Notes: generated by a model not told the origin, from the sequence alone. A DNA stretch of 56,855 nt, filler included, from Basidiobolus meristosporus CBS 931.73 (GCA_002104905.1; 3 parts of 3 records of this genome joined end to end with filler, not necessarily neighbours in it); one strand, 5' to 3'. Positions 24,415-43,194 are shown, counted from the whole stretch's first letter. A program made the numbers and translations.

Positions 24415-24877
24415 TAACCTCTATATGGTAGATTGGTACTTGGCATGGTTCTTCCAACTGAACCTCTAGGTTAGTAAATAACTACCAAGTGACTGGCAAT
24501 TGGTTGGACGGATGGAAAAATATTTACACGTTCTTAGATGTGGAGCCACTTTACTGCTCACTTGCTAACAGTCATTATCTGGATATACTTGTTTTCCATA
24601 CCTGTTGTAGTTACTGACAGTACTCATCGAAAGTCCGAAAAAGTACGTGCTGTGTGTGAAGTAGGACTTTCATGTCGGCCTCGCCCCATTTAAAGGGAAA
24701 ACAGAGAGTGTTTACAGCAATGGTACATTGTAGTATTCATACATGTTTAGTCAGAACGAGCAAGTGCAACTTTTGTATAACCACTCCACATTAGCCCTGT
24801 CAAGAATCCACTATATCAGTCGCATAGAGGAATATGAAAGCTCTGTTTTGCTGAAGGTTAATTCTATAGAATTTGAA

Positions 24878-25160
24878 ATGATCAGCCAACTGAAAATTCC
24901 ATCCACCCTTCTAATGACTACACTGGCCATGAGTGCTCAACTGCAGTGCAGAGTCTCTCAGTTCAGCAAATACCTTATGTACAGATACACATCTTGGGAG
25001 CTCAAGTAAAAAATGAAAGGCATGCCCAAGACCGCGAACCTCATACCACAACAGATGACTTACAGTATGCAGAAGTAGTATCGAGAAGTGATGCTGGCTA
25101 TTCTCCCAAGGATCATACGACAGGCCGCAAAAGTGACTCGGCGAAGAATTCCAGGAAACT
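24878..25160 (+). pseudogene. Peptide-precursor copy P1 (remnant)
   Basis: MISQLKIPSTLLMTTLAMSAQLQ matches the P8 signal peptide; the rest is decayed. Confidence 0.75.
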
Positions 25161-25274
25161 GAATCATGAAGCTATTTGTTACTTTCTAAATGATTTGACA
25201 TTATGATTGATCGTTTAATGGATACAATGAGGTTAGATACAATGGCAGACACTATGGTGAAAACATAAAATACA

Positions 25275-26799
25275 CTAGTTCAGAGACATAGTAGCAAGGG
25301 AAGCCAAACTGAAGTAAACAAGAGCTGAACTTGGATTGAAAAGGCCAGCCCCATCACTAGTAGTACATATGTGGGTTCCATTTGCAGGCGGAGCTTTGGA
25401 ATCAAGGCAGGTGCTTTGCTTTGGGTCATCATCTTCAGTTTCAGTCTTGATCATGGCTTCACATTTGTAGGCCACGTTTGCAAGTGGCGCCTTAGGGTCG
25501 ATACAAGTGCTTTTCTTTGTGACGTTGAGTTCCACAGCCTCGAAGAGGTTACGCATCCAGTGGAATGTATAGTTAGTCTTGAAGCCGGGGTAGATCATGT
25601 TGACAGTGTCTTGCAGAGCAGCATCAGCCATCACAACGGCATTTCTGAACCAATCGGCATCGCCGCTCTTGGTTTGGGTTCTGTCTACACGGTATACTGC
25701 CTTGTTGCTGATGAACTTGTATTGTGTGTCAGCCACAGACAGGTTGTACAGGTGCAGTACCTCCTCAATGGTAGGGTAGGTGATGTTTAGGTCAGTGAAA
25801 TCCGTCCTGTCCACTAAAATGTCTGCATCTTCGATAACATTCAGCAAATCGGGCAACTCATACCCAGAGAACGAAATAGTATTGAACAGCCTAGAGTCAT
25901 CATGATCTTCTGTCAATTGAGCGCCACTATCCTGCATCAAATGACTTAAGTAGCCAGGAGTGCAGTGCATATAGGATATTGCGTCGATAGCATCGATCAA
26001 ATAGACCCAAGCAACCTTTGGCGTGGTTTTGTCCGCCATCAACTGTACCTCGTTTTTGATACAGTCATAATTGTCGTGAATGCTTTGTGTGACATTGTTG
26101 GCAACCCTCTCCAGGTTGAAGAAGACTGAATAAACCTTGAGTAGGTCTGATTTCGTAAGTGGACTGGCGGTTACCTCCTCATAGATGTTGATGGTTTTGT
26201 TTCCATCAACATCTATGTCTGGGGTAAAGTAGGCATCAACATTCTCGTCAAAACTGTTGTTGGCAATGCATGGAGACGTAAAGTACTGTGGATAGGCAGA
26301 TACGATACGCTCAACTAGACCAAGCGTCTTGAATGAGCCATGAGTTAGAATACGCCTCTGTATCACCTTTATGAAATTAGCCAACCGTGGAAACTTACAT
26401 CTAGATAGCTAGCTTCTGTAGGGCCAACATTACCCACTCTATTCAGTGGGATTTCAAAGAACTTGTCGTATTGGCTGATACGTTGCGGCTGAGGAGTCCC
26501 GCGCTGGTAGAGGATATATTTATCAGTACTTGAAAGCTGCACGTACTTCCAGTTCATTCTGTATTCAATACTACGCTCGGTTTCGATATTAACTAAACGA
26601 ACAGAAATGATCAGTAAGCTCTCGTAGTGCTGCTACGAATGAAATGGCTCATACATGTGACTTTGTCTGGGAAATAGTCGGTGGCTGGGTCATAATTCTC
26701 TACTGTGAATGATGGATCTACGATGTTCGAGGTGAGTACCTCACAAGAGACAGCAGTAAGGCCGAGGAAAGTAAGAGTGCAAATGCTGAAGCAACGCAT
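25275..26799 (-). CDS. S1: CBA1-like periplasmic-binding-protein-fold surface protein, signal peptide + GPI-type tail, ~463 aa, intact
   Basis: Exons 26799-26655, 26592-26399, 26327-25275 join in frame (intron 2 acceptor is AAG). Motifs DYFPDKV, YILYQRGTP, FFEIPL, TSPC, SVFFNLE, NKAVYRVD, DWF..AVV.AD.AL.D. Confidence 0.85.
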
Positions 26800-27573
26800 G
26801 TGTATTGATGTTGGATGTTTCGTGATGCACACTTAAATAATATCTGGCCATTGTACATTCGAACACATTGGCTGATCATCCAAAAATATGGACAAATAGG
26901 GCACTAACTATTGTGATCAAATTACTTACACAAGTAGCAAGATATATCATCTGGCCATTTACACATTGGAACACATTAGTTGGTCCACCGGAAACATCCC
27001 ACTAATTAGGATAGATTCCGTTGATGATGTGATGAAACAAGTTAGATACGTTTCTTTACGAGCCAATTGGGGCTACAAATCTTGCAAGCACCATTCGTGG
27101 ATGTCAAATAACCATCTATGGAAAATCAATTCACTGCACCGAGGAACAACTTCCAAAAAGCTGACAGTTAATGAGATAGATTGGATGAATATTATAGCCA
27201 TTGCCTTGGGTGAAAACGATTTGTAGTATAGCTTACAGCCTTCATCTAGATAAACGTCTACTTGCATATCTGAACTTATATATACACTAGCTGTGGCCCT
27301 CTGCGACTACTGGGGCTTTTGCTGATATTTATAACGACTCTGGCTCTTTATACCTCAGGAAAGACTACGTACAAGCCTACCCGTTAGACTTATTTTACTC
27401 CCCTCAACTCAAATCATAGTATACCTCAGCTTAGAAGAAAAGCTCTGATAATATGCCTTCCGGTATGACATATGTGCCATCTCATTAATCCTTCCCCGCT
27501 AACTAAGCATCAAGAGGTGCTCCCATCCCAACATAAAGCCTCTTGATAGATACGGCTGAACCCTAGCAAGTAC

Positions 27574-27820
27574 ATAATCCGAGAACTAGCAATCCCATTC
27601 ACACTCTCAATGGTAACCATGACAATGGGTGCAAAATTACATTTCACCATTGGTCCACCTCCTCTCAGCAACATTGCTATTAGGTTGACATTCACCGAAT
27701 CACTCAGACCAGCACAAACGCTATGGATAGGTTACTAAGTGAAATCATGATTACTAGGCTCGAGGACGTTTTGGGAGATACGGCTGGTACTACAACTGGG
27801 ACTACCTGTTTGATAAATAA
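27574..27820 (+). pseudogene. Peptide-precursor copy P2 (start lost, internal deletion)
   Basis: IIRELAIPFTL... followed by RGRFGRYGWYYNWDY and the conserved GATAAATAAATGAA 3' motif. Confidence 0.75.
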
Positions 27821-28032
27821 ATGAATCAGTAATTTCATATCGCTGTGATACTTGTCCCCAACACGCACACACTAATCTAGCTCAGAACTGTGCATAATGA
27901 CAAGACTTGAATCCAGATCGTGAAATCAATGAGATCGCCATAATGTTACGATATAAAATTATTTATGAGATTGCCTTCGATTATAACCGGTTACCTACAG
28001 TAATAGTTGCTATATTGGTGATGTGTAATGCA

Positions 28033-29468
28033 CTAGCCCAAATAGGCAGCTACAACAGAAGCCAACCCGAAGTAAACAAGAGCTGAGCTGGGACTGAAAA
28101 GGCTAACCCCATCGTTGGTATCAGTCTTGATCTTGGCGTCACACTTGTATGCCACATTTGCAAGTGACGCCTTAGGATCGATACAAGTGCCTTGCTGCGT
28201 ACCGTTCAGCTTCTCACCATCGAAAAGGTTACGCATCCAGTGGAAAGTGTAGTTACTCTTGAAGCCAGGGTGGACCATATTCACTGTGTCCTGGAGTGCA
28301 GCATCAGCCATCACAACAGCATTGAAGAACCAATCGGCATCGCCGCTCTTGGTTTGGGTTCTGTCTACGCGGTATACTGCCTTGTTGCTGATGAACTTGT
28401 ATTGTGTGTCAGCCACAGACAGGTTGTACAGGTGCAGTACCTCATCAACCTTAGGATAGGTAATGTTCAGGTGAATGAAACTTGACATATCTACTAAGAT
28501 GTCTGCATCCTTGATGACTTCTAGGACTTCATTCAATGGATTCCCAAAAGCTGAAATACCATTGTTTTCCTCAAACTCTATTATTGATTGTGCGCCACTA
28601 TCCCGCATCAGATAGTGTAGGTAGTTTGGAGTGTAGAGAACGTATGATATTCTTGAGGTTAAATAATCGATTATATAGACCCAAGCAATCTTTGGCGTTG
28701 TCTTAGCCGTCATCGACTGTACCTCGCTCTTGACGCAGTTATAGTTGCCCTCAATGTCCTGTGTGATCTTGTTGGCGGTCTTCTCCAGGTTAAAGAAAAC
28801 CGAATAAGTCTTGAGCAAATCCGACCTCGTGAGTGGCCTGGACATCGTCAACTCATAGATGTTGATGGTATCGTTCCTATCAGCATTTACACCTGGGGCA
28901 AAGTAGGCTCCAACATTTGACCCTGAATTGTTGTTGGCAATACACGGGGATGTAAAGTATTGTGGCTCGACAGATACGATACGTTCACCTAGGCCAAGCA
29001 TCTAGAATAAGCATGTCAGAAATTGCTACCAAATCGATGTTATCAAATGAGCCATCAATGGTAACTCACATCTAAAAAGCTAGCCGCGGTCGAATTTGCA
29101 ATGCTCACTCGATTCAGCGGGATTTCGAAGAACTTGTCATACTTGCTGACACGTTCCGGCTGAGGAGTCCCACGCTGGTAGAGGATGTACCTATTAGTCG
29201 GTGAAAGCTGCACATACTTCCAATTCATTCTGTATTCGATACGGCTCTCTGTTTCATTATTGACTAAGCGAACGGAATGCATTAGTAAGCCATCTTAGTG
29301 TGAATACAAATGAAGTGGCTCGTACATGTGACTTTGTCTGGGAAATAGTCGGTGGCTGGGTCGTAATTCTCCACCCTGAAGGATGGATCTACGATGTTCG
29401 AGGTGAGTACCTCAAGAGACAGCAGTAAGGCCAAGAAAAGTAAGAGTGCAAATGCTGAAGCAACGCAT
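28033..29468 (-). pseudogene. S2: CBA1-like copy with a 2-bp deletion in exon 1 (otherwise 435 aa)
   Basis: Exons 29468-29326 (143 nt instead of 145), 29263-29070, 29001-28033. TCTTGTGAG>TCTTGAG at ~29414 creates a stop. Could be an assembly error. Confidence 0.8.
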
Positions 29469-30454
29469 GTGTATTGATGTTGGATGTTTTGTGCTGCACA
29501 TTTAAATAATAACTGGCCATTGTACAATCGAATACCTTGGCTGCTTACCCAGAGCCATCGCGCAAAGTAGGATAGATCACACCAACTATTGTGCTCAAGT
29601 TAGTTACACAAGATCCTTTACCACGAGGCATGGAACGCTTTGTATGTAACAATGTTGCTTCCATTCCTTATCAGTGATGTTGTAGCAATTACATCACTAT
29701 CACTGGTGAATACCAAACAATCTCAATATGGTAAATTGGTGCTTGGCATCGCTTTTCCAAATAATGGGTAATTGGTTGGTCAGATTAAACAATATTCCAG
29801 TGTATAGTCACACACAAAATATCCTGTGGAGACAGTATATTTGACCACCATTTTTGGTTCTACTCTACTGTTCACTTGCCGACAGTTACCATTTCAAGTT
29901 CTTTATATCCAATTGTACTGATAGTATGCGTCGGCAATCTGATAATGTACAGGCGATGAGTGAGCAAATTCAAATCATTCATCATACCCTAAATGTAGAG
30001 GAAACTGAGTGCACCTACTGTGATGTTGTATTTATAAAAATTCAGGAAGAGAACTGTAGTTTGTGTAAATCCCCTTTTCATTTCACATGGCTGCTGAAAA
30101 GAATGCAGTCATATCAACTGAATTCAACTGGGTGCCAAGAACTTCCCTATATTCGGCTTCGTGATATATAAGCTGTGTATAACAAATATCTGAATCCCTA
30201 GTCTGATCATATGCTCATCAAAAAGACAGGATCGTGTGATAAAACGCTGGTATATTGAATAGAAAACAACGAATTCATCGGCATACCGTCACTCGTCTTT
30301 ACACCAGAGAATTGCCTGATGCAGATTAGCTCGCTAGGGATCATATACCGTTTTCATTAAACTGACTAGGCTTACCAAATCATATGATATATTCTAGTGC
30401 TATTACAAAAGTTTGTTCTGCTTTAAGCTAATGCCTCAGAACTCGAACTGGAAT

Positions 30455-30945
30455 ATGATCAGCCAACTAGCAAGCCCATTCCCTCTTCTACTAGCCACAC
30501 TGGTCATGGGCGCTCAGCTGCAGTCTACCGCTGGCCCAGCCTCCTTCAGAAAGGTGGCCCTTCAGCGAGTCCCTTAGCCCAGCACAGAATCGTAATGATG
30601 GATATACCATCCGGGAGTTCAAGTCAAACAAGAAGGAAGACGCATCAAGGATCATGAGCCTTATTCTCCAGCAGATGACGAACAGCATGCAAAAGAAGGA
30701 GTATACCCCACTCTCGAACATGCTTGACATAGATGAGGCGAAGACTGGTACCGCCTCCGATCCGAAGGATCCCACTCTAGGCAGCAAAGGTGGAGATGAA
30801 GGTGAGGGTATTTCTGAGATGAACCCCGAGGAAGCTGAGCTTTGGGGCAATTATGGTCGCTGGAGACGTGAATACTGGGAGATATGGTGGGTGTAGTCGG
30901 TGGGGAGGCAGAAGATATGGCGGGTGCTATGACTGGGACTGCTGA
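30455..30945 (+). pseudogene. Peptide-precursor copy P3 (two frameshifting deletions)
   Basis: MISQLASPFPLLLATLVMGAQLQ...PEEAELWGNYGRWRREYW.../RYGGCSRWGGRRYGGCYDWDC*. Confidence 0.85.
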
Positions 30946-31119
30946 TTTCATAAATAAATGAACCAGTCATTTCACTACATACTTGTGATGTTCCTTTCAT
31001 CATGCTGGCAGTGCGGCATCCATACATCCACACATATCTATCTCGGATCAAAGAACAAAGACGATTCTCGAAATGAAATCATGAAATGTTGTTAGATTAC
31101 CTTTGACATATAGGTTAGA

Positions 31120-31390
31120 TACAGTAATAGCCTGTACACAGGCTGAGTTTGTATTGCAAAGCCAAGACCATCACTGGTATTTATGCATCCAGTGGAAAAT
31201 AGAATCACCTCGACGCCGCAGCTCCCACAACTAATCTTACTGTTATTGTGAGTACGCCACGCTATTTGAATGTCAGGCTTAGTACTGGCGGTAATTGTCT
31301 GGTGTATTACTTCTCCATATATTCGTCGCAGCAACAATACAATCCAAAGCTTTTTCGCAGGTCATGATCTATCAGATGCGTGAACAACAC
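31120..31390 (-). pseudogene. S3: collapsed CBA1-like remnant
   Basis: FHWM and TSDGLGF fragments, next to a 3' UTR resembling those of S1 and S4. Confidence 0.55.
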
Positions 31391-31528
31391 TGAGATATGA
31401 ATATTCAATCCATCAAACCCCGTCAATCTTTGCTACAGACCCAATTATATTCCAAATATCTCTACTTGATTAAGGGTAGCTCATTGCCTTTGTCATGAGG
31501 GCCAATGCCGTGGAACCTGACCTGCGAT

Positions 31529-31850
31529 AAGATCAGCCAACTAGCAATCCCACTCAACCTCCTTGGCCACGGGTATTTCACTGCACTCCATAACTGACCA
31601 AGACACTCGAAAAGATATAGACACCGAACCTGTATCTACCGATTCATTTAGTCCTACACAAAACCCCGAGGACGGATATATCCTCCGGGAGTCCCAGTTA
31701 AGCAAGATATGTCGAGGATCATGAACCTTACTTACCATCAAATGACTCAAAGCATGCAGAAGGAATTTATAAATAGGAGAACTGATGATATCTCTGCTTC
31801 CAAGTATCCAACCATATACCACAAAAGCGACTCGAAGAATCCCAAGTAAA
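31529..31850 (+). pseudogene. Peptide-precursor copy P4 (remnant)
   Basis: AAG replaces ATG; ISQLAIPLNLL and SRIMNL...QMTQSMQK fragments. Confidence 0.7.
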
Positions 31851-32058
31851 CTGAATCATGAAGTTATTTGTTACTTTCTAAATAATTCGACATTATGGTT
31901 GATCGTTTGATGGATACAGTGAGGTTAGATACAGTAGCAGGCACTATGGTGAATACATAAATTACACTATTTCAGACAGGTAGCTGCAAGAGAAGCCAGC
32001 CCGAAGTAAGCAACAGTCGAACATAGATTAAAAAACCAATCCCATTGTTAGTAATTAT

Positions 32059-33402
32059 CTAGATCCTGGCATCACATTTGTAGGCCACGTTTGCAAGTGG
32101 TGCCTTGGGATCAATACAAGTGCTGTGCTTCGGACCATCGAGCTTCTCGTCGTCGAAAAGGCTACGCATCCAGTGGAAAGTGTAGTTACTCTTGAAGTCA
32201 TGGTGAGCCATATTCACTGTGTCTTGCAGAGCAGCATCAGCCATCACAACTGCATTGAAGTACCAATCGACATCACCGCCCTTGGTTTGTATTCTATCTA
32301 CACGGTATACTGCCTTGTTGCTGATGAACTTATATTGTGTGTCAGCCACGGACAGGTTGTATAGTTGCAATACCTCATCAACCGTAGGGTAGGTAATGTT
32401 CTGGTGAATGAAATCTGATATTTCCACTACAATGTCTGCGTCCTTGATGACATCTAGGAACTCATTCAAATTTTTATATCCGTGAGCCAAAGCGCCGTTA
32501 TCTTCGTCAAACTCTATTAATTGTGCGCCACTATCCTGCATCAGAGAGCCCAAGTAGCTCGTTGTGGAGTAAACGTAGTACACATCCGAGCCGTGATATT
32601 TGTAATAATCGGATCTATAGATCCAAGCAATCTTTGGCATTGTCTTGGCCTTCATCGACCCTACCTCGCTCTTAACGCAGTTATAGTTGTCCTCAATCTT
32701 CCGTGTGATCTTATTGGCGGTCTTCTCCAGGTTGAAGAAGACAGAATAAATTTTGATTAAATCTGATCTCACAAGTGGACTGTACCACGGATCCTCAGTA
32801 ATGTGGATGGTTTTGTTCCCAACGATATATCTGTCTGGGGAAAAAAGTGCATCAACGTTTACCCCTGAATTACTATTGGCAATGCACGGGGATGTGAGGT
32901 ATTGTGGTTCGGCAGACACGATACGCTCACCTAGGCCTAGCATCTATGATAACCATGTGTCAGGAAATGCTTCTAAATCATTCGTATTAGTAAGAACTCA
33001 CATCAAGATAGCTAACCGCAGTCGAGTTCACAACTTCCACTCGATTCAGCGGGATTTCAAAGAACTCGTCGTATTGGCTGATTCGCTCTGGTTGAGGAGT
33101 CCCACGCTGGTAGAGGATATACTTGTGAATACTTGAAAGCTGCACATACTTCCAGTTCATTCTGTATTCGATACGGCTCTTTGTTGCATTGTTAACTAAA
33201 TGGACGGAATGCATTAGTAGGTTATCTTAGTGTGAATACAAATGACGTGACTTGTACATGTGACTTTGTCTGGGAAATAGTCGGTGGCTGGGTCGTAATT
33301 CTCCACCCTGAAGGATGGATCTACGATGTTCGAGGTGAGTACCTCACAAGAGACAGCAGTAAGGCCGAGGAAAGTAAGAGTGCAAATGCTGAAGCAACGC
33401 AT
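32059..33402 (-). CDS. S4: CBA1-like copy, ~407 aa, stop before the GPI signal
   Basis: Exons 33402-33258, 33195-33002, 32943-32059 in frame. AAG>TAG at 32059-32061; a decayed GPI-tail sequence follows. Confidence 0.78.
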
Positions 33403-33934
33403 GTGTATTGATGTTGGATGCTTCGTGCTGCACACTTAAATAATAACTGCAATCTGATCATTGTACATTCGAACACATTGGCTGATCATCCAGAACTATC
33501 GCAGAAATTAGGATAGATTGCACCAACTGTTGCGCCCCAAATAGTTACACGAGATCATTTATCGCGAGGAAAAGAACACTCATATGTAACACTGTTGCTT
33601 CCACTCCTTGTCAGTGATGATGTAATAGCCACATCGCTATCACTCGTGGATACTAAACAACCTCTATATGGTAGATTGGCGCTTGGCATTTCTGTTCCAA
33701 ATGGAAGACGGGCGGACAGAACAAGATTCCGGTGGATAGCCACATAGAGAATAACATATGGGGACTGCATATTCAGCCATCGTTTTTGGGCCTACTTCAC
33801 TGCTCTCTTGCTGACAGTTGTCATCTCGAAACTTGAAATACCTCGGCTAAGACTTCACTATATTCAACTTCATGATATCTCAGCCATATAGAGTGTCAGA
33901 CCTGGCATTGACGGTAAAAATACTTAGACTTGTA

Positions 33935-33970
33935 AGGTAGAAGGTATAGCGGGCTTCATAAATAAATGAA
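33935..33970 (+). pseudogene. Peptide-precursor trace P5 (3' end only)
   Basis: GGTAGAAGGTATAGCGGG...CATAAATAAATGAACC matches the 3' ends of P3 and P8. Confidence 0.5.
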
Positions 33971-34159
33971 CCAACAATTATTTCATACCTATACATCCAC
34001 ATATATCTATGCCGGACCAGTGAGCAAAGACAATGCTTGAGGAGAAGTTCGAAATTGTAGGGATGAACTACAATGATATTACATTCAACTATTTATTAGA
34101 TAACTTGAGACTAAAATAGCTTGATGCTGTGATAGACAGTATAGTGAAGACGCGTAATA

Positions 34160-34608
34160 CCATAGCCCAGATAGATGGCTACAATAGAAGCTGAAAACGA
34201 GTAAACAAGAGCCGACCTTGAGTTGAAAAAGCCAACTCCATCATTAGTATCACACTTATAAACCAAGAAGCTGAAGTGGTACCATATTGCATTGAGAAGG
34301 CCGAGGAGTGCCGCGCTGATAAAAGATTCAAGTCTAATAGAAAAGCTGTAGATACTTCCAGCTCTTTTGGTAATAAATACGATTCTCCATTGGGGCGTCA
34401 ACTAAATGAATGGAATGGATCAGTAAGCTCACTTAGCGTTGCTACGAATTAAGTGACTCATACATGTGACTTTGTCTGGGAAATTGTTGGAGGCTGAGTC
34501 GTAAAGCTCTATCTTGAATGCTGGATCTACAATGTTGGAGGTGAGTTTCTTACAAGAAACGGTAGTAAGGCCGAGGAAAGGCAGAATGTAGGTGCATAAG
34601 CACCGTAT
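34160..34608 (-). pseudogene. S5: CBA1-like remnant with a large internal deletion
   Basis: ATA for ATG, recognisable exon 1 (FPDKVT) and intron 1, part of exon 2 fused to YKCDTNDGVGFFNSRSALVY. Confidence 0.85.
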
Positions 34609-34940
34609 GTGTACTGATGTTGTATGTAGTATGCTGAACACTTACATAACATCATAGCCTTCAAACACATTAGCTGATCCACAAGAAACGTCGGACAATT
34701 TAGACATCAACTGCTGTGATCAAATGAGCTACATGAGTTTCTTTAACTATAGGCTAAGATCATATGCAAGTGACACTGTTGTTTGTTTTCCTTATCAGTG
34801 GTGTTACGATCTCCAAATCAATACTACTGTTGGATAACAATCTCTATATGGTAGATCCGTACTTGACATTACTCTCTCAAATGAAAGAAATTTTGCTGGT
34901 CAGATAGAATGATATTATAGTGTGTAGTCGGATGCACCGC

Positions 34941-35290
34941 TCAAGTCAAGCAAGAAGGAAGACGCGTAACGAACCATGAGCCTTATTTACCACCAAACGA
35001 CAAGCAGCATGTACCAGAAGGAGTATTCTCCACTCTCAAACATACTTGACATTTAAAAGACAAGAGCTCATTCAGTCCTCGATACAGGGATACCACCATC
35101 GACGACAAAAGTTGAGCGGAGGATAAGGGCAATTTAGAGAGAATTTTAAGGAAACATTACTAAGTGGGGAAGATACGGTCGCTGGAGACATGGTTACTAG
35201 GTTTGAGGACGCCACGGGATATATACTAACTATGCTCGGTGGGAAGGTCGAAGGGTATGGCAGGTTCAAAGACTGCTAGTTTATAAGTGA
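34941..35290 (+). pseudogene. Peptide-precursor copy P6 (3' half)
   Basis: KSSKKEDA, KEYSPLSNILD and KWGRYGRWRHGY fragments with stops. Confidence 0.75.
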
Positions 35291-35516
35291 ACAAGCCAGT
35301 AATTCGGTATAATCACTGTGATACTCTTTCGAACATGCCTAGCAATACACTCACACAACACCAACTTAGAGTTGTGAATAATGACAAGACTTGAAGCCAG
35401 ATCATGAAATCAATGAGATCGACATAATGTTATGACTTACAATTATTTATTAGACTGCCTTCGATTATAATAGGTTACTTACAGTAATGGTAGACGTATT
35501 GATGATGTGTAATGCA

Positions 35517-36952
35517 CTAGCCCAAATAGGCAGCTACAACAGAAGCCAACCCGAAGTAAACAAGAGCTGAGCTTGGACTGAAAATAGCTGACCCCATCGT
35601 TAGTATCAGTCTTGATCTTGGCATCACACTTGTAGGCTACATTCACTAGTGGTGCCTTGGGATCAGTACAAGTGCTTTGCTGCGTGCCATTAAGCTTTTC
35701 ATCCATCGAAGAGGTTACGCATCCAGTGGAAAGTTGTAGTTACTCTTGAAGCCAGGGTGGACCATATTCACTGTGTCTTGCAGTGCAGCATCAGCCATCA
35801 CAACGGCATTGAAGAACCAATCGGCATCGCCACTCTTGGTTTGGGTTCTGTCTACGCGGTATACTGCCTTGTTGCTGATGAACTTGTATTGTGTGTCAGC
35901 CACAGACAAGTTGTACAGTTGCAGTACCTCATCAACGGTAGGGTAGGTGATATTTTGGTGAATGAAACTTGACATCTCCACTATGATGTCTGCATCCTTG
36001 ATGACTTCAAGGAACTCATTTAATGAATATCCGAATGCTGTAATACTATAATTTTCCTCGAACTCCATCATTAGTTGAGCGCCACTATCCTTCGTCAAAG
36101 AGTATAAGTAGTTCGGAGTGTAGTAGACGTAGGATATGTTCGAGGAGAAGGTGTAGGCATCGGTTATGTAGACCCAAGCAATCTTTGGCGTTGTCTTAGC
36201 CGTCATCGATTTTACCTCGCTCTTGACGCAGTTGTAGTTGCCTTCAATGTCCTGTGTGATCTTGTTGGCAGTCTTTTCCAGGTTGAAGAAGACCGAATAA
36301 ACTTTGAGTAGATCTGATCTCATAACTGGAGTGTACCACGTATACTCAACAAGGTTGATGGTTTTGTTTCCATCGGCATATATGGATGGGGAAAAAAGTG
36401 CATCAACATTTGCACTCGAACTGTTGTTGGCAATGCACGGGGATGTAAAGGATTGTGGCTCGACAGATGCGATACGTTCACCTAGGCCTAGCATCTAGGA
36501 TAACCATGTGTCAGACAATGCTTCCAAATCATTCATGCCAGTAGCAACTTACATCTAGATAGCTAGCCCAGTCGAATTTGCAATGCTCACTCGATTCAGC
36601 GGGATTTCGAAGAACTTGTCATACTTGCTGACACGTTCCGGCTGAGGAGTCCCGCGCTGGTAGAGGATGTACCTATTAGTAGATGAAAGCTGCACATACT
36701 TCCAATTCATTCTGTATTCGATACGACTCTCAGTTGCATTGTTAACTAAACGGATGGAATGCATTAATACGCTATCTCAGTGTGAATACAAACGAAGTGA
36801 CTCGTACACGTGACTTTGTCTGGGAAATAGTCGGTGGCTGGGTCGTAATTCTCCACCCTGAAGGATGGATCTACGATGTTCGAGGTGAGTACCTCACAGG
36901 AGACAGCAGTAAGGCCGAGGAAAGTAAGAGTGTAAAAGCTAAAGCAACGCAT
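35517..36952 (-). pseudogene. S6: CBA1-like copy with several single-base indels
   Basis: Exon 2 is 193 nt (1-bp deletion at ~36568); extra bases at ~35735, ~35700 and ~35585 relative to S2/S7. Confidence 0.8.
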
Positions 36953-37053
36953 GTGTATTGATGTTGGATGTTTCGTGCTGCACACTTAAATAATAACTGG
37001 CCATCGTACATTCGAACATATTGGCTGATCATCCAGAACCATGGCACAAAATA

Positions 37054-37430
37054 GGATAGATCACACCCACTATTATGCTCAAATTAGTTACACGAGTTCA
37101 CATACTTCGAGGCATCGAACATTCGTATGTAACAGTGTTGCTTCCACTCCTTGTCAGTGGTGTTGCAACAGCTACATAACTAACACCGGTGGACACCAAA
37201 CAATCTCAATATGGTAGATTGGCGCTTAGCATAGATATATGGATAGATCACGCCCACTATTATGCTCAAATTAGTTACGCGACATCATTTACCACGAGGG
37301 AAAGGACACTCGTATGTAACACTGTTGCTTCTATTCCTTGTCAGCAGTGTTGCAACAGCCGCGACGCTATCACTAGTGGATGCTAAACAATCTCAATATG
37401 GTAAATTGGCGCTTGGCATAGCTCTTCCAA
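37054..37430. repeat. 187-bp tandem duplication in the S6 upstream region
   Basis: GGATAGATCAC... recurs at 37054 and 37241. Confidence 0.85.
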
Positions 37431-37954
37431 ATTACAAATGATAGGTAATTGGCTGGTCCCACGGAACAAAATACCAGTGTATAGTCGCATGCAGAACAAT
37501 AGATGGAGACAGCGTATTCGGTCACCATTTTTGGCTCTACTCTACTGTTCGCTTAGTGACAACTACAATTTTGAAAGCTATACACCTCACAAACATCGGC
37601 TACGTGCACTGACTGAGCATGTTTTGTCAGGAAGAGAACTGTAGTTTGTATATGACCACTTTTCATTTCACCTTAGCAAGCGTACCTACCAAATTCCATC
37701 TGGTGCGGAAATATTTCGGCCGAGACTTCACTATATTTATTTTCATGATATATTAGCCGTATAGTGCAAATCTTGGAGTCTTCAGTCCGATCATGTGTTC
37801 ATCATAAGTGCTGGTGCATTAAACAGAAAACAACCAATTCATCAGACTACCGTTACTGACTTTCGCTCAAGAGAGTTGTCTAGCTCATAGTGGCTTATTG
37901 GAGCTTATTTCTTTGTTCTGCTAAGAGCTGCTGTCTCAGAATCTGACCTGGAAT

Positions 37955-38465
37955 ATGATCGGACAACTGGCAATCCCATTCTCCTTCATAATAGCCACAC
38001 TGGCCATTGGTGCTCAACTGCAGTTTACTACTGACTCAGCTGCTCCTGGGAACGTGGCCAGATGATCAACATCCACCGAATTACTTAGTCCAGCAAAGAA
38101 TTCTGGGAACGGATACACCGCCCAGGAGTTCAAGTCATAAAAGAAGGAAGATGCGTAAAGGATCATGAACCTTATATCCCAGCGGACGACGAAGAGTATG
38201 CCCAACAAAGAGTAACTCTAGCATACTTGATATGGATAAGATGGGGCTAATCCGGTCACTGATTCTCAGGAGCCGGCCATGGACCTCAATAGTGGAGATG
38301 AGGCGAGGCTGGCTTAGTGAGGAATGCCGAGGAAGGGTGACTAAGTGGGGAAGATACGGATGCTAGATTCGAGGACGCTTTGGGGGATACGACAATAATA
38401 GTCGGTGAGGAGGTAAAAGATATGACGGGCGCTACAACTGGGACGACCAGTTCGATAAATAAATG
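37955..38465 (+). pseudogene. Peptide-precursor copy P7 (multiple stops)
   Basis: MIGQLAIPFSFIIATLAIGAQLQ...VAR*, later KWGRY and RGRFGGY fragments. Confidence 0.85.
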
Positions 38466-38642
38466 AAATTATACGCCCGTACAAATTTAGCTCAGAGCTG
38501 TGAATAATGACAAGACTTGAATCCAGATCGTGAAATCAATGAGATCGTCGTAATGTTATGACATACAATTATTTATTAAACTGCCTTCGATTATGAAAAG
38601 TTACTCACAGTAATAGTTGATGTATTGGTGGTGTGTAATACA

Positions 38643-40071
38643 CTAGCCCAAATAGGCAGCTATAACGGAAGCCAACCCGAAGTAAACAAGAGCTGAGTTG
38701 GGATCGAAAAAGCTGACCCCATCGTTGGTATCAGTCTTGATCTTGGCATCACACTTGTAGGCTACATTTGCGAGTGGCGCCTTGGGATCAGCACAAGTGC
38801 TTTGCTGCGTGCCATTAAGCTTTTCACCATCGAAGAGGTTACGCATCCAGTGGAAAGTGTAGTTACTCTTGAAGCCAGGGTGGACCATATTCACTGTGTC
38901 TTGCAGAGCAGCATCAGCCATCGCAACAGCATTGAAGAACCAATCGGCATCGCCGCTCTTGGTTTGGGTTCTGTCTACGCGGTATACTGCCTTGTTGCTG
39001 ATGAACTTGTATTGTGTGTCAGCCACAGACAAGTTGTACAGTTGCAGTACCTCATCAACGGTAGGGTAGGTGATATTTTGGTGAATGAAACTTGACATAT
39101 CCACTACAATATCTGCATCCTTGATGACTTCAAGGAACTCATTCAATGGATGTCCCGTAGCTGTAGGAGTACTACTTTCCTCAAACTCTACCAGTAATTG
39201 TGCGCCACTATCCTGCGTCAGATAGTGTAGGTGATTCGGAGTGTAGTGAACGTATGCTCTCTCCGAGGGTGAATCATCGAATACATAAACCCAGGCAATC
39301 TTTGGGGTAGTCTTGGCCGTCATCGATTGTACCTCACTCTTGACGCAGTTATAGTTGTCCTCAATCTCTTGTGCGACCTTGCTGGCAGTCTTCTCCAAGT
39401 TGAAGAAGACCGAATAAACTTCGAGTAGATCTGATCTCATAACTGGAGTGTACCACGTGTACTCAACAATGTTGATGGTTTTGTTTCCATCAGCATATAT
39501 GGATGGGGAAAAAAGTGCATCAACATTTGCACTCGAACTGTTGTTGGCAATGCACGGGGACGTGAAGGATTGTGGCTCGACAGATGCGATACGCTCACTT
39601 AAGCCTAGCATCTAGAATAAACCATGTGTCAGACAATGCTTCCAAATCATTCGTGTCATTAGTAACTTACATCTAGATAGCTAGCCGCAGTCGAGTTCGC
39701 AATGTCCACTCGATTCAGCGGGATTTCAAAGAACTTGTCGTACTTGCTGACACGTTCCGGCTGAGGAGTCCCACGCTGGTAGAGGATGTACGTATCAGTC
39801 TGTGAAAGCTGCACATACTTCCAGTTCATTCTGTAGTCAATACTACGCTTGGTGTCATTGTTAACTAAACGGATGGAATGCATTAATACGCTATCTTATG
39901 GTAAATACAAATGGCGTGGCTCGTACATGTGACTTTGTCTGGGAAATAGTCGGTGGCTGGGTCGTAATTCTCCACCCTGAAGGATGGATCTACGATGTTG
40001 GAGGTGAGTACCTCACAGGAGACAGCAGTAAGGCCGAGGAAGGTAAGAGTGTAGATGCTGAAGCAACGCAT
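38643..40071 (-). CDS. S7: CBA1-like surface protein, signal peptide + GPI-type tail, 435 aa, intact
   Basis: Exons 40071-39927, 39864-39671, 39611-38643 with canonical GT-AG introns. C-terminus TNDGVSFFDPNSALVYFGLASVIAAYLG*. Confidence 0.88.
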
Positions 40072-40172
40072 GTGTATTGATGTTGGATGTTTCATGCTGC
40101 ACACTTAAATAATAACTGGCCATCGTACATTCGAACATATTGGCTGATCATCCAGAACCATAGCACAAAATA

Positions 40173-40550
40173 GGATAGATCACACCAACCATTATGCTCA
40201 AATTAGTTACACGAGTTCCTATACTTCGAGGCATCGAACATTCGTATGTAACAGTGTTGCTTCCACTCCTTGTCAGTGGTGTTGCAATAGATACATAACT
40301 AACACTGGTGGACACCAAACAATCTCAATATGGTAGATTAGCGCTTGGCATAGATATATGGATAGATCACACCAACTATTATGCTCAAATTAGTTACGCG
40401 ACATCATTTACTACGAGGTAAAGAACACTCGTATGTAACACTGTTGCTTCCACTCCTTGTCAGCAGTGTTGCAACAGCCGCGACGCTATCACTAGTGGAT
40501 GCTAAACAATCTCAATATGGCAAATTGGCGCTTGGCATAGCTCTTACAAT
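40173..40550. repeat. 187-bp tandem duplication in the S7 upstream region
   Basis: Same duplication as at 37054 (units at 40173 and 40360). Confidence 0.85.
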
Positions 40551-41073
40551 TTACAAATGATAGGTAATTGGTTGATCCCATAGAACAAAATACCAGTGTA
40601 TAGTCGCATACAGGACAACGTGCACCTACTGCAACGTTTTATGTATGTTGGCATACTTTGTCAAGAAGGGTGCTGCGGTTTGTATATGTCCCGTTTTTAT
40701 ATCATCTCGACAGTCGTACCTACTGAATTCCTTCTAGTGTGCAAACACTTCGGCCAAGACTTCACTATATTCAACTTTATGATATATCAGCTGTATAGAG
40801 CAAATCTCTGAGTCTCCAGTCCGATCATGTGTTCACCATAATGACAGAATGGTGGGATAAAATGCTGATGCACTAAATAGAAAACAGTCAATTCATCAGA
40901 CTACTGTCACTCTTCTTTACACCAGAGATTTCCCTGATTCGGAGTAGCTCGCTAGAGCTCATATACTGTTTTCATTAAACTAGCTAGGACAACCAAACCA
41001 CATGATGTATTCTGGTGTCAATATAAAATCTTTGGCCTGCTGAAGGCTAAGGCTACAGAACCTGGCCTGCAGT

Positions 41074-41592
41074 ATGATCAGACAATTAGCAATCCCATTC
41101 ACCCTCCTAATAGCCACACTGGCCATGGGTGCTCAACTGCAGTCCATCGCTGTTCCAACTGCTCCTGGGAACGTGGCCACCAACTCTGTATCCACCGAAT
41201 CACTTGGTCCAGCACAGAATCCTGGGGACGGGTATACCGTCCGGGAGTATAAGTCAAACAAGAAGGAAGACGCATCAAGGATCATGAACCTTATTCTTCA
41301 GCAGATGACAAACAGCATGCAAAAGAAGGAGTATCCTCCACTCTCGAACATGCTCGAAATGGATGACGCGCGAACTAGAGCTGCCTCAGAACCAAAGAAA
41401 CACACCGTTGAGACCAGGAGTGGAGGTGAGGGTGAGGATATCTCTGAGAAGAATCCCGAGGAAGCTGAGCTGTAGGGAAGATTTGCTCGCTCAAGACGTG
41501 GATACTGGGGCCGAGGACGCTTCGGGAGATATGGTGGGTATGGTTGGTGGGGAGGTAGAAGGTACAGCGGATGCTACGACTGGGACTGTTGA
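41074..41592 (+). CDS. P8: secreted precursor (signal peptide, acidic pro-region, G/R/W/Y-rich cationic C-terminal peptide); one in-frame TAG at 41473-41475
   Basis: 133 aa to the TAG, then in frame GRFARSRRGYWGRGRFGRYGGYGWWGGRRYSGCYDWDC*. P3 has TGG at the aligned codon, giving 172 aa if Trp is restored. Confidence 0.7.
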
Positions 41593-41942
41593 TTTGATAA
41601 ATAAATAGTTGCACAGGTATTGGCAGTGTGCGGAATCGTCCATTCCCAATATAGATCTGGAGATGCAATCACGCACGGACTGTTGACATCAGCATGTCTT
41701 TTATATTTGGGGGAGTAAATCGCGAAGACTGGTACTGCCTTTTACTATACTGCCTTTCACCACCCAATGTGCAACCCAAGTATATAGATAGATTCGACGT
41801 TATCAACATGAAACACGATATGTCAATGGTATGAAAATATATATAGATTTATGAGAAAATCAAATTTCACATGAAATAAACTGTATATACTGTGCAAAGA
41901 AAAGTATTTGTCGGAAATATATGCGATTGCTTCACCGTCAAG

Positions 41943-42840: not shown

Positions 42841-43194
42841 GTTTGTCGCGTTTGGAGTTGGTGGAGTAGGGTAGGGTAGGGTAGGTGCACGGAATCGAAC
42901 AAACCAGAACTAAAGGTTTGAGTTACGAGATGGTCGGTCTTTATAGCGCAATAATTTATCAATTCCTCGAGCCAATGGACAATAGGTAAATATTTGGAGT
43001 TGGGGATTCTAAATGGGAACCTTGGATTCCGACAAATTAATCATCAATCGACTCTTGACTTTAATCATTTCCAGATAAAGGCCTTTCCAAGTATCACATG
43101 AGCTCAGATAAAGCCTCGCTAAAATTAGATGATGGATTGTGCCGTTGTTCAGCCAAACGCTCGACAAACAATGGATTCTAATAGAACAGGAGGG

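What the first reader, a model, noticed from the sequence alone, without database searches (positions are those of the whole stretch)
25275..40071. Expanded family of GPI-type, CBA1/BtuF-like binding proteins in a fungus
Seen: signal peptide, conserved 3-exon structure, and a small-residue omega-like site (SDG/NDG) plus hydrophobic C-terminus with no cytosolic tail. Established: helical-backbone (class III) substrate-binding proteins bind cobalamin, siderophores or heme; algal CBA1 has this fold and is needed for B12 uptake; early-diverging fungi retain B12-dependent enzymes. The family motif I recall as RAEW-x6-FFNxE appears here as (R/K)SDL-x6-FFNLE, an altered motif. Inference: a fungal cell-surface cobamide or metal-chelate capture system, possibly with shifted specificity.
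Basis: partly seen in the sequence, partly recalled or inferred. Interest (0 to 1): 0.78.

Follow-up and report, generated by a model that had tools for sequence, protein, structure and literature searches.

The report
Tandem fungal CBA1-like binding-protein genes
A gut-dwelling early-diverging fungus (Basidiobolus meristosporus) carries a tandem cluster of five diverged, partly broken copies of a secreted, probably GPI-anchored binding protein from the family that algae need to take up vitamin B12; the fold and family are confirmed, but the ligand is untested.

Summary
The piece is a 19.6-kb scaffold of Basidiobolus meristosporus CBS 931.73. On the minus strand it carries five ~1.7-kb three-exon paralogues plus one internally deleted remnant (25275-40071).

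Pfam does not recognise the proteins directly. An exhaustive HMMER search gives 739 relatives. These include the Allomyces protein that Sayer et al. 2023 listed as a CBA1 homologue.

Only two copies are complete as assembled (c5, c1). Copy c3 has lost its anchor signal through a stop codon. Copies c2 and c4 carry frameshifts that are absent from a 99%-identical second haplotype.

The array differs from the family at conserved positions: RAEW becomes RSDL, DWFE becomes DWF(F/R), and one cysteine pair is lost.

Cell-surface capture of cobalamin is the best guess, because the species has MetH, MCM and five class II RNRs. The ligand is untested. This is a new member of a known family, of moderate interest.

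The parts
38643..40071 (-). Copy c5, complete gene of 435 codons. Exon 1 is 40071-39927, intron 1 is 39926-39865, exon 2 is 39864-39671, intron 2 is 39670-39612, and exon 3 is 39611-38643 including the stop.
   Evidence: Each exon is open in the expected phase, with GTACGA..TAG and GTAAGT..TAG introns. An upstream ATG at 40095 is not conserved in the other copies.
39393..39437 (-). In c5, the altered family motif RSDLLEVYSVFFNLE. The family consensus is RAEWxKFxxxFFNxE.
   Evidence: Among 97 relatives the W is present in 87, the E of RAEW in 74, and F/N/E of FFNxE in 89/90/95.
38934..38945 (-). In c5, DWFF in place of the family's DWFE. The Glu corresponds to E396 of Chlamydomonas CBA1, which was placed near the modelled B12 site.
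   Evidence: E is present in 73 of 97 relatives. The window copies have F (c5, c2, c4, c3) or R (c1).
38646..38726 (-). In c5, a GPI-signal-like C-terminus: N-D-G (candidate omega site), the spacer VSFFDPNS, then a 16-residue hydrophobic end with no cytosolic tail.
   Evidence: This was judged by rule-of-thumb inspection only; no predictor was available.
35517..36952 (-). Copy c4, frameshifted as assembled. It has a 1-nt deletion in exon 2 (about 36571) and 1-nt insertions in exon 3 (about 35738, 35705 and 35588). The database model P0001 is a partial model of it.
   Evidence: All four indels are absent from the second haplotype L001, which has its own 1-nt deletion at the position matching window 35535.
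34154..34745 (-). Internally deleted remnant of a sixth copy. The exon 1 region is joined to the C-terminal tail region.
32059..33402 (-). Copy c3, 407 codons. Exons are 33402-33258, 33195-33002 and 32943-32059. A premature TAG removes the omega site and the hydrophobic tail, so this would be a soluble secreted form.
   Evidence: The same stop is present in the second haplotype (P0002, L001). Degenerate tail sequence is still visible downstream.
28033..29468 (-). Copy c2. Exons 2 and 3 are intact (29263-29070 and 29001-28033). Exon 1 (29468-29326) has a 2-nt deletion at about 29417, which gives a TGA after 18 codons.
   Evidence: The deletion is absent from haplotype L001.
25275..26799 (-). 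Copy c1, complete gene of 463 codons and the most diverged copy. Exons are 26799-26655, 26592-26399 and 26327-25275. It has a 78-nt in-frame internal duplication of the STCxDxKAPxAN..C motif (about 25443), the motifs KSDL..FFNLE and DWFR, and the tail TSDG...
   Evidence: In haplotype L001 this copy carries an extra G at the position matching window 26017, which explains the truncated model P0003.

Best explanation
This is a lineage-specific tandem array of paralogues of the eukaryotic CBA1 family (cobalamin acquisition protein 1). That family is a branch of the class III, helical-backbone substrate-binding proteins (Peripla_BP_2 superfamily). The array lies in the amphibian- and reptile-gut fungus Basidiobolus meristosporus.

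Each intact gene has three exons. It encodes a secretory glycoprotein: a signal peptide, a two-lobed binding domain of about 330 residues with 4-8 N-x-S/T sequons in exon 3, four of the family's six conserved cysteines, and a C-terminal signal of the GPI-attachment type.

The most likely role is high-affinity capture of a corrinoid (vitamin B12 or a related cobamide made by gut bacteria) at the outer face of the plasma membrane or cell wall, followed by internalisation through another component, probably endocytosis. The protein has no transporter domain of its own. The tail-less copy c3 would be a released, soluble form.

Shown here: fold, family, gene structures, vertical descent, purifying selection, and altered conserved residues. 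Inferred: GPI anchoring, surface location, ligand, hand-over mechanism, and any shift in specificity.
For: Identity of the piece:
- P0001 is a B. meristosporus CBS 931.73 protein on a contig of exactly 19641 bp.

Family:
- phmmer of P0002 against 1.84 billion representatives gives 739 hits at E<=1e-3 and 277 at E<=1e-10.
- The best named hits are Basidiobolus ranarum, Calcarisporiella, Umbelopsis, Acaulospora, Acrasis, Mycoemilia, Mortierella, Coemansia, Blyttiomyces, Amoeboaphelidium and Paraglomus.
- P0107 (E 1e-17) begins with the same residues as the Allomyces sequence in Sayer et al.'s CBA1 hit list.
- The residues Sayer et al. list as conserved (E206, F214, F215, N216, E218, P251, V253, W255, W394, F395, E396, D408) map with matching spacing onto the consensus RAEW..FFNxE, PxVAW and DWFE..D.

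Fold:
- 21 of 97 relatives hit Pfam Peripla_BP_2, best E 5.7e-19.
- The family profile hits the PDB heme and iron binders Lmo2184 and IsdE.
- The AF2 model has pLDDT 88.4 and pTM 0.88.
- Foldseek's top matches are all class III SBPs at E down to 1e-9.
- The Atlas fold search gives TM 0.86 and 0.80 to Mucoromycota and Zoopagomycota clusters, 0.79 to a Streptophyta cluster, and 0.74 to bacterial Peripla_BP_2.

Vertical descent:
- The window copies form a clade (99*). It is sister to B. meristosporus P0005 (99*), lies inside a Basidiobolus clade (97*), and sits next to Kickxellomycotina, then Mucoromycota, Allomyces and chytrids.
- The position of intron 2 is shared with the single-copy paralogues P0005 and P0004.

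Selection:
- Pairwise dN/dS over exon 3 is 0.28-0.38, with dS 0.40-0.72.

Need for B12:
- Orlowska et al. 2021, Table S1, lists for B. meristosporus MM-CoA mutase 1, CblAdo transferase 3, MeaB 1, MetH 2, CblD 1 and RNR class II 5.

Function of the family:
- CBA1 knock-outs abolish B12 uptake in Chlamydomonas and Phaeodactylum, and CBA1 localises to the plasma membrane and endomembranes (PMC10828217).

Anchor:
- 85 of the 155 sequences scored (family representatives plus the four window copies) end in a hydrophobic stretch with 4 or fewer residues after it.
Against: - No ligand evidence of any kind exists for a fungal member.
- Structural neighbours rank siderophore and heme binders above BtuF. 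The fold therefore does not favour B12.
- The Glu that Sayer et al. place next to the modelled B12 (E396) is F or R here. It is also missing in every Basidiobolus paralogue seen: S, F, S and T in P0004, P0005, P0007 and P0015. The family's W of RAEW is L.
- Land plants keep CBA1 homologues although they do not use B12. Family membership alone does not prove cobalamin binding.
- Two of the five copies are frameshifted and one lacks the tail as assembled.
- No expression data could be obtained.
- GPI anchoring rests on inspection only.
- CrCBA1 and PtCBA1 themselves were not among the 150 listed hits. The link to them is transitive, through the Allomyces protein and the signature residues.
Confidence: 0.55

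Rival explanations
1. The fold and location are as in the best explanation, but the ligand is not cobalamin. The array would capture another bulky metal chelate, such as a ferric siderophore (its own or pirated from gut bacteria), heme, or another tetrapyrrole. The paralogues would differ in specificity.
For: - The top structural neighbours are catecholate or hydroxamate siderophore binders and heme binders: CeuE, YiuA, PhuT/ShuT, HmuT. The profile hits IsdE and Lmo2184.
- The pocket Glu of the CBA1 signature is replaced, and the W of RAEW is lost.
- Plants keep the family without using B12.
- Basidiobolus has a marked expansion of siderophore NRPS genes of bacterial and fungal type and shows CAS activity (PMC7466969).
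- Diatoms use a cell-surface class III SBP, FBP1, for hydroxamate siderophores (PMC6876252).
- Variation between paralogues is concentrated in two loop regions, exon-3 codons about 21-60 and 121-160, where dN/dS reaches about 0.6-1.2.
Against: - The proteins fall in the CBA1 family, not among FBP1/DesE-type proteins (FBP1 itself was not compared directly).
- The only experimentally tested members of this family act in B12 uptake.
- 13 of the 16 signature residues are retained, by the inferred mapping.
- The species clearly needs exogenous B12.
- Fold ranking among class III SBPs is not a reliable guide to the ligand.
Confidence: 0.27
2. The array is a decaying cluster of redundant duplicates with little or no present function. 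The working CBA1-like genes of the species are the single-copy paralogues elsewhere (P0005, P0015/P0152, and others).
For: - c2 has a 2-nt deletion that gives an early stop. c4 has four 1-nt indels. c3 has lost its tail. A sixth copy is reduced to a remnant.
- The other haplotype has its own frameshifts in c1 and c4.
- The interspersed small secreted-protein gene also carries a nonsense allele and has two degenerate copies.
- The branch to the array clade is long.
Against: - dN/dS is 0.28-0.38 with dS 0.4-0.7, which shows long-term purifying selection on exon 3.
- c5 and c1 are complete.
- Every frameshift is private to one haplotype, and the indels cluster within about 1.3 kb that includes intergenic DNA. 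Each copy is therefore intact on at least one haplotype, or the indels are consensus errors of the assembly.
- Splice sites and signature residues are kept in all copies.
Confidence: 0.12
3. The genes are a recent horizontal acquisition of a bacterial ABC-transporter substrate-binding protein. Basidiobolus is known for such acquisitions.
For: - Class III SBP fold.
- Basidiobolus has documented bacterial HGT (PMC7466969).
- A few bacterial lipoprotein-like sequences occur among the remote hits, such as P0141, P0143 and P0151.
Against: - The nearest relatives are all fungi, in roughly species-tree order. The bacterial sequences sit in a distant clade.
- There are two spliceosomal introns, one of them shared with paralogues at other loci.
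- The family is eukaryote-wide.
- No ABC permease or ATPase genes are nearby.
Confidence: 0.03

Closest known systems
CBA1 (cobalamin acquisition protein 1) of Chlamydomonas reinhardtii and Phaeodactylum tricornutum, and its eukaryote-wide homologues (Bertrand 2012; Sayer et al. 2023, PMC10828217)
   Same: Same protein family, shown by HMMER hits shared with the published homologue list and by the signature RAEW..FFNxE, PxVAW and DWFE..D. Both have a signal peptide, a single class III SBP domain, a C-terminal membrane attachment and no transporter domain. Both occur in organisms that have MetH.
   Different: - The anchor looks like a GPI signal rather than a transmembrane helix with a cytosolic tail.
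- The genes form a tandem array of 5-6 copies.
- W of RAEW is L, and E of RAEW is D.
- The pocket Glu (E396 equivalent) is F or R.
- Two of the six family cysteines are lost.
- No functional data exist for any fungal member.
BtuF, the periplasmic vitamin B12-binding protein of the bacterial BtuCD-F importer
   Same: Same fold, two Rossmann-like lobes joined by a rigid helix. V. cholerae BtuF is a Foldseek match at E 3e-7. One family member hits the NCBIfam BtuF model weakly.
   Different: No detectable sequence similarity to the window proteins. There is no partner ABC permease or ATPase. These are eukaryotic secretory proteins with glycosylation sequons and disulfide cysteines. BtuF is not among the top structural matches.
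Bacterial siderophore and heme SBPs: CeuE, YiuA, FhuD-type, PhuT/ShuT, HmuT, IsdE
   Different: Only 8-16% identity. The cellular context also differs.
FBP1, the diatom cell-surface ferrichrome/ferrioxamine receptor (Coale et al. 2019, PMC6876252)
   Same: A eukaryotic, surface-exposed class III SBP that works without an ABC importer, by endocytosis. It is a precedent for the siderophore rival.
   Different: FBP1 derives from actinobacterial hydroxamate-binding lipoproteins by HGT and is paired with the reductase FRE2. The window family is the CBA1 lineage, and no reductase gene is adjacent. A direct comparison with FBP1 was not run.
Fungal CFEM heme relay (GPI-anchored Rbt5/Pga7 plus secreted Csa2 in Candida). 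This is cited from my own knowledge, and the resemblance is in how it works only.
   Same: Anchored and soluble paralogues of one small-ligand binder at the fungal surface feeding an endocytic uptake route. This matches the mix here of anchored copies (c5, c1) and a tail-less copy (c3).
   Different: An unrelated fold and ligand. The relay idea is speculation for this locus.

Membership tests
CBA1 family (eukaryotic cobalamin acquisition protein 1 homologues) | Significant sequence similarity to proteins accepted as CBA1 homologues | tested here: met
   P0002 hits P0107 at E 1e-17 in a library of 1.84 billion proteins. P0107 begins with the same residues as the Allomyces macrogynus entry in Sayer et al.'s CBA1 list. 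CrCBA1 and PtCBA1 themselves were not among the 150 listed hits, so the link is transitive.
CBA1 family (eukaryotic cobalamin acquisition protein 1 homologues) | The conserved residues listed by Sayer et al. (K78, P118, L136, E206, F214, F215, N216, E218, P251, V253, W255, G289, W394, F395, E396, D408) | tested here: inconclusive
   The mapping is by motif spacing onto alignment A2 and is inferred; CrCBA1 itself was not aligned. About 13 residues are identical. E206 becomes D and V253 becomes I, both conservative. E396 becomes F or R, which is radical. In addition, the family's W next to E206 is L (87 of 97 relatives have W).
CBA1 family (eukaryotic cobalamin acquisition protein 1 homologues) | Signal peptide plus a C-terminal membrane attachment, with a single SBP domain | tested here: met
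   A hydrophobic N-terminus and a hydrophobic C-terminal end are seen by inspection and by a hydropathy scan. The domain is modelled at residues about 51-376. The anchor type (GPI-like) differs from the transmembrane helix of CrCBA1.
CBA1 family (eukaryotic cobalamin acquisition protein 1 homologues) | Required for, or binds, vitamin B12 | not testable with these tools
   Needs binding or uptake assays.
CBA1 family (eukaryotic cobalamin acquisition protein 1 homologues) | Co-occurrence with B12-dependent enzymes in the same genome | tested here: met
   From the literature only: Orlowska et al. 2021, Table S1, lists MetH 2, MM-CoA mutase 1 and RNR class II 5 for B. meristosporus. I did not re-derive this from the genome.
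Class III (cluster A, helical-backbone) substrate-binding proteins / Pfam Peripla_BP_2 (PF01497) | Two alpha/beta lobes joined by a single long rigid helix | tested here: met
Class III (cluster A, helical-backbone) substrate-binding proteins / Pfam Peripla_BP_2 (PF01497) | Pfam HMM hit above the gathering score | tested here: not met
   The best window protein (c2 exon 3) scores 14.3 bits against a cut-off of 27.5, E 0.028. P0002 has no hit. However, 21 of 97 relatives do hit PF01497, best E 5.7e-19. Membership is therefore at superfamily level, through intermediates and the fold.
GPI-anchored proteins | N-terminal signal peptide; small omega, omega+1 and omega+2 residues; a polar spacer of 5-10 residues; a terminal hydrophobic stretch of 10-20 residues with no tail | tested here: inconclusive
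   The pattern is N/S-D-G, then an 8-residue spacer, then 16 hydrophobic residues ending the protein in c5, c2, c4 and c1. No GPI predictor (NetGPI, PredGPI, big-PI) and no experiment were available. c3 lacks the signal.
FBP1-type eukaryotic siderophore receptors | Descent from actinobacterial hydroxamate-siderophore lipoproteins, and pairing with an FRE reductase gene | not tested
   No FBP1 sequence was available from a tool. The tree places the window proteins among fungal CBA1-like proteins. No reductase ORF is seen in the piece.

The most novel reading that the evidence does not exclude
The Basidiobolus CBA1-like proteins, and this array in particular, may have been retuned. They have lost the pocket Glu, the RAEW tryptophan and one disulfide, and the paralogues differ mainly in two loop regions. 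The anchored and soluble copies could then form a surface relay that captures different bacterial corrinoids (cobamide variants, cobinamide) or even bacterial siderophores in the vertebrate gut. That would make them a fungal 'cobalophore/receptor' system with paralogue-specific ligands.
Probability: 0.2. Interest if true: 0.7.

Novelty: new member of a known kind. Interest (0 to 1): 0.42.

Why it matters
How fungi that use vitamin B12 obtain it is unknown. Orlowska et al. 2021 showed that B12-dependent enzymes occur throughout non-Dikarya fungi. Sayer et al. 2023 noted that some fungi have CBA1 homologues and called for tests.

This locus offers concrete candidates in a culturable gut fungus with an unusually large set of B12-dependent enzymes. 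It has two complete anchored copies and one naturally tail-less copy, together with a clear list of deviating conserved residues. Binding assays on these proteins would show whether CBA1-family proteins bind cobalamin directly. That is still unproven even in algae. They would also show whether the conserved Glu and Trp are needed for binding.

If the ligand turned out to be different, it would help explain why B12-free land plants keep the family.

Tried and rejected
- Direct Pfam scans of the window exons and of P0001-P0003 gave nothing significant. The best hit was Peripla_BP_2 at E 0.028.
- phmmer of exon 3 against PDB sequences gave only noise.
- The word-indexed protein search found only the species' own proteins. 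With the 97-sequence profile it found only 9 hits. The exhaustive HMMER search was therefore needed.
- An NCBIfam scan of the 97 relatives was uninformative. It gave one weak BtuF hit and one PGF-CTERM SBP hit.
- I tried to find CrCBA1 and PtCBA1 among the fetched hits by their N-terminal residues. They were absent, and only the Allomyces sequence matched.
There is therefore no test of expression, of splice junctions, or of whether the 1-2-nt indels are real.
- Model coordinates are not exposed to scripts. Pocket residues, disulfide geometry and mapping of the variable loops onto the cleft could not be computed.
- The exons were searched by reference. The database model P0002 (99% identical to c3) served as the full-length proxy for the HMMER search, the alignment and the fold.
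- Bacterial HGT was considered and rejected on the tree and the introns.
- The small secreted gene between the copies gave no family in Pfam and only a sub-threshold Atlas lead.

Full report
**What the piece is.** The usable stretch (24415-44055, 19641 bp) is a whole scaffold of Basidiobolus meristosporus CBS 931.73. The word-indexed protein search with exon 3 of the best copy returned only three proteins, all from that strain. One of them (P0001, K493DRAFT_343132) lies on a contig of exactly 19641 bp.

The piece is also 99% identical and collinear with the last 17.6 kb of a second scaffold, MCFE01000530.1 (L001). It is therefore a second haplotype, or a very recent duplicate, of the same locus. 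Counts of this 'family' in the annotated proteome are inflated accordingly.

**The observation.** Self-BLAST finds five full repeat units on the minus strand, at 25296-26935, 27941-29648, 31963-33588, 35425-37131 and 38550-40250. They are 78-91% identical to the last one. There is also an internally deleted remnant at 34154-34745.

Aligning the units shows one gene layout in all five:
- Exon 1 runs 145 nt from a conserved ATG.
- Intron 1 is 62 nt.
- Exon 2 is 194 nt.
- Intron 2 is 58-71 nt.
- Exon 3 is 885-1053 nt.
- All introns have GT..AG ends at identical positions.

The same exon junctions are used by the public gene model P0002 (407 aa). P0002 is 99% identical to copy c3 but is encoded on the other scaffold.

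The N-terminus (MRCFSI.TLTFLGLTAVSC) looks like a signal peptide. The C-terminus of c5, c2, c4 and c1 is T-(N/S)-D-G, then eight mixed residues, then a 16-residue hydrophobic end with no tail. Exon 3 carries 4-8 N-x-S/T sequons.

**State of the copies.**
- c5 (435 codons) and c1 (463 codons) are complete. c1 has a 78-nt in-frame duplication of the C-terminal Cys-containing motif.
- c3 ends at a TAG that removes the omega region and the hydrophobic tail. The same stop is in the other haplotype, so a soluble form is an established allele.
- c2 has a 2-nt deletion in exon 1, which gives a TGA after 18 codons.
- c4 has one 1-nt deletion in exon 2 and three 1-nt insertions in exon 3.

None of these frameshifts is present in L001. 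L001 has frameshifts of its own, in c4 (at the position matching window 35535) and in c1 (an extra G at 26017, which explains the truncated model P0003). In c4 the indels cluster in about 1.3 kb that extends into intergenic DNA. That pattern fits either allele-specific decay or consensus errors.

**What the proteins are.** Pfam, PDB-sequence and NCBIfam searches of the window proteins give nothing significant. That justified the exhaustive search.

phmmer of P0002 against 1.84 billion representatives found 739 proteins at E<=1e-3 and 277 at E<=1e-10. The named ones are overwhelmingly early-diverging fungi: Basidiobolus ranarum, Calcarisporiella, Umbelopsis, Mortierella, Acaulospora, Paraglomus, Mycoemilia, Coemansia, Blyttiomyces and the aphelid Amoeboaphelidium. 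A heterolobosean, Acrasis, is also among them.

Hit P0107 begins with the same residues as the Allomyces macrogynus sequence that Sayer et al. 2023 (PMC10828217) list among 277 CBA1 homologues. A second hit resembles their Spizellomyces entry.

The consensus of 97 single-domain relatives (A2) reads ...LxRAEWxKFxxxFFNxE... PxVAW ... GxxDWFExA....DxVLxD. By spacing, it corresponds to the conserved residues E206, F214, F215, N216, E218, P251, V253, W255, W394, F395, E396 and D408 of Chlamydomonas CBA1.

Further support for the fold:
- 21 of the 97 relatives reach Pfam Peripla_BP_2, best E 5.7e-19.
- The A2 profile hits the PDB heme and iron binders Lmo2184 (8.5e-6) and IsdE (2.2e-4).
- The feature search of the ESM Atlas gave eukaryotic 'Fe/B12 periplasmic-binding domain' clusters at 0.96-0.97.

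**Fold.** An AlphaFold2 model of P0002 built on A2 is confident, with mean pLDDT 88.4 and pTM 0.88.
- Foldseek against the PDB returns only class III substrate-binding proteins at probability 1.00: an iron SBP of Eubacterium eligens, CeuE, YiuA, ShuT, PiaA and V. cholerae BtuF.
- The Atlas fold search gives TM 0.86 and 0.80 to clusters of Mucoromycota and Zoopagomycota proteins, 0.79 to a Streptophyta cluster, and 0.74 to cyanobacterial Peripla_BP_2 proteins.

The ranking does not discriminate between ligands. Siderophore and heme binders lead, and BtuF is further down.

**Origin.** In a maximum-likelihood tree (69 rows, LG+C20 PMSF, quick search), the four translatable window copies and P0002 form one clade (SH-aLRT 99). 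Its sister is another B. meristosporus protein, P0005 (99). Both lie in a Basidiobolus clade with P0004 and P0007 (B. ranarum) and P0015 (97). Next come Kickxellomycotina, then Mucoromycota, Allomyces and chytrids. Bacterial-looking sequences sit far away.

P0005 and P0004 are single-copy at their own loci and share the position of intron 2. The family is thus an inherited eukaryotic one, and the tandem array is a Basidiobolus-specific expansion. Bacterial HGT is rejected.

Pairwise dS of 0.40-0.72 shows that the duplications are not recent. dN/dS of 0.28-0.38 shows purifying selection. Identity along the units is mosaic. Exon 1 and codons about 180-240 of exon 3 are 88-100% identical with very low dS. 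Two segments (exon-3 codons about 21-60 and 121-160) are 57-81% identical with dN/dS up to about 1. This suggests gene conversion plus locally relaxed or diversifying change. I could not map those segments onto the cleft because model coordinates are not exposed.

**How the array departs from its family**.
- RAEW is RSDL or KSDL. The W is found in 87 of 97 relatives, and L is found only in B. meristosporus proteins.
- DWFE is DWFF, DWYF or DWFR. The Glu is present in 73 of 97 relatives, and Sayer et al. place it (E396) in the cluster around the modelled B12.
- Two of six conserved cysteines, those at P0002 positions 32 and 79, are both replaced. 80 of 97 relatives have both. This is consistent with loss of one disulfide.

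The loss of Cys79 and of the Glu is shared by all five Basidiobolus representatives (P0002, P0004, P0005, P0007, P0015). It is therefore a trait of the genus and not only of this array.

The GPI-like tail is not special either. 85 of the 155 sequences scored (the family representatives plus the four window copies) end this way, including the Allomyces and Spizellomyces-like proteins, and 25 have a transmembrane helix plus a tail.

**Mechanism.** The family's only tested members are needed for B12 uptake in two algae and sit at the plasma membrane and endomembranes. Their direct binding of B12 is still inferred.

B. meristosporus is listed with MetH (2), MM-CoA mutase (1), MeaB, CblD, three adenosyltransferases and five class II ribonucleotide reductases (Orlowska et al. 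2021, Table S1). It lives among B12-producing gut bacteria.

My best reading (0.55) is surface capture of a corrinoid by GPI-anchored copies, with c3 as a released form, and uptake by a separate route, probably endocytosis.

The main rival (0.27) is another chelate, a siderophore or heme. It is favoured by the structural neighbours, by the lost pocket Glu, by the plants' retention of the family without B12, by the siderophore-rich biology of Basidiobolus (PMC7466969), and by the diatom precedent FBP1 (PMC6876252).

A decaying, functionless cluster (0.12) is argued against by dN/dS and by the haplotype-private nature of the frameshifts.

**Novelty.** Fungal CBA1 homologues and their co-occurrence with MetH were already pointed out by Sayer et al. 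2023, and UniRef already labels P0002 'Periplasmic binding protein'.

New here are the tandem array, its mixed state (anchored, tail-less and broken copies), the predicted GPI-type anchoring of the fungal branch, and the catalogue of altered signature residues. I file it as a new member (a divergent subfamily) of a known kind, with moderate interest.

**Limits.** No reads, no GPI or signal-peptide predictor, and no model coordinates were available. CrCBA1, PtCBA1 and FBP1 were not aligned directly.

Noticed in passing
window 41074-41592 (+); degenerate copies at about 30177-31138 (+) and 24743-25200 (+): A small secreted-protein gene is interspersed with the array. In haplotype L001 it is 172 aa, with the signal peptide MIRQLAIPFTLLIATLAMGAQLQ and a Gly/Arg/Trp/Tyr-rich, cationic C-terminus ending in CYDWDC. 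In the window haplotype codon 134 is a stop (Trp in L001). The two other copies are riddled with frameshifts. There is no Pfam family, and the Atlas gave only a sub-threshold lead ('glycine-rich protein', Oomycota, 0.81). The layout X-c5-c4-remnant-c3-X'-c2-c1-X'' suggests larger segmental duplications.
   Followed up: partly
whole piece 25913-43405 versus L001 (MCFE01000530.1:44049-61688): The 19.6-kb scaffold is a 99%-identical, collinear second copy of the end of a 61.7-kb scaffold, with about 90 mismatches per 12 kb. It is probably a haplotig. Single-base indels are unevenly spread, with 10 falling between 35142 and 36570. Larger indels of 144-258 bp lie in the intergenic DNA around 29544-31229.
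   Followed up: partly
A2 alignment; P0004, P0005, P0007, P0015 and the window copies: Every Basidiobolus member of the family lacks the conserved Cys of LYQCGTP (it is R, H or K) and the Glu of DWFE. Three of the five also lack the N-terminal partner Cys. So no 'canonical' CBA1 was seen for this genus among the 150 best hits.
   Followed up: partly
hits P0006, P0008, P0009, P0014, P0016, P0023, P0028 and others: Many relatives, mostly unnamed metagenomic or eukaryotic proteins of 800-1500 aa, carry two to four tandem copies of the CBA1-like domain in one polypeptide.
   Followed up: no
window 25365-25443 (c1 exon 3): c1 has a 78-nt in-frame internal duplication of the C-terminal motif STCxDxKAPxAN..C, which adds a further pair of cysteines just before the omega region.
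   Followed up: partly
window about 38850-39100, and the equivalent stretch in the other copies: This stretch of exon 3 (NLSVADTQYKFISNKAVYRVDRTQTKSGDADWF...) is 88-100% identical at the DNA level between copies, with dS as low as 0.04. Neighbouring parts of the same exon are 57-81% identical. Gene conversion between paralogues is likely.
   Followed up: partly
window about 41940-42840 (-) and 43195-43638 (-): Flanking genes appear unrelated to the array. One is a Cg6151-P (PF10233) small membrane protein, from the L001 gene call and a weak Pfam hit on one exon. The other is part of a 301-aa multi-pass membrane protein with no Pfam family. No ABC transporter, reductase or B12-pathway gene lies in the piece.
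   Followed up: partly
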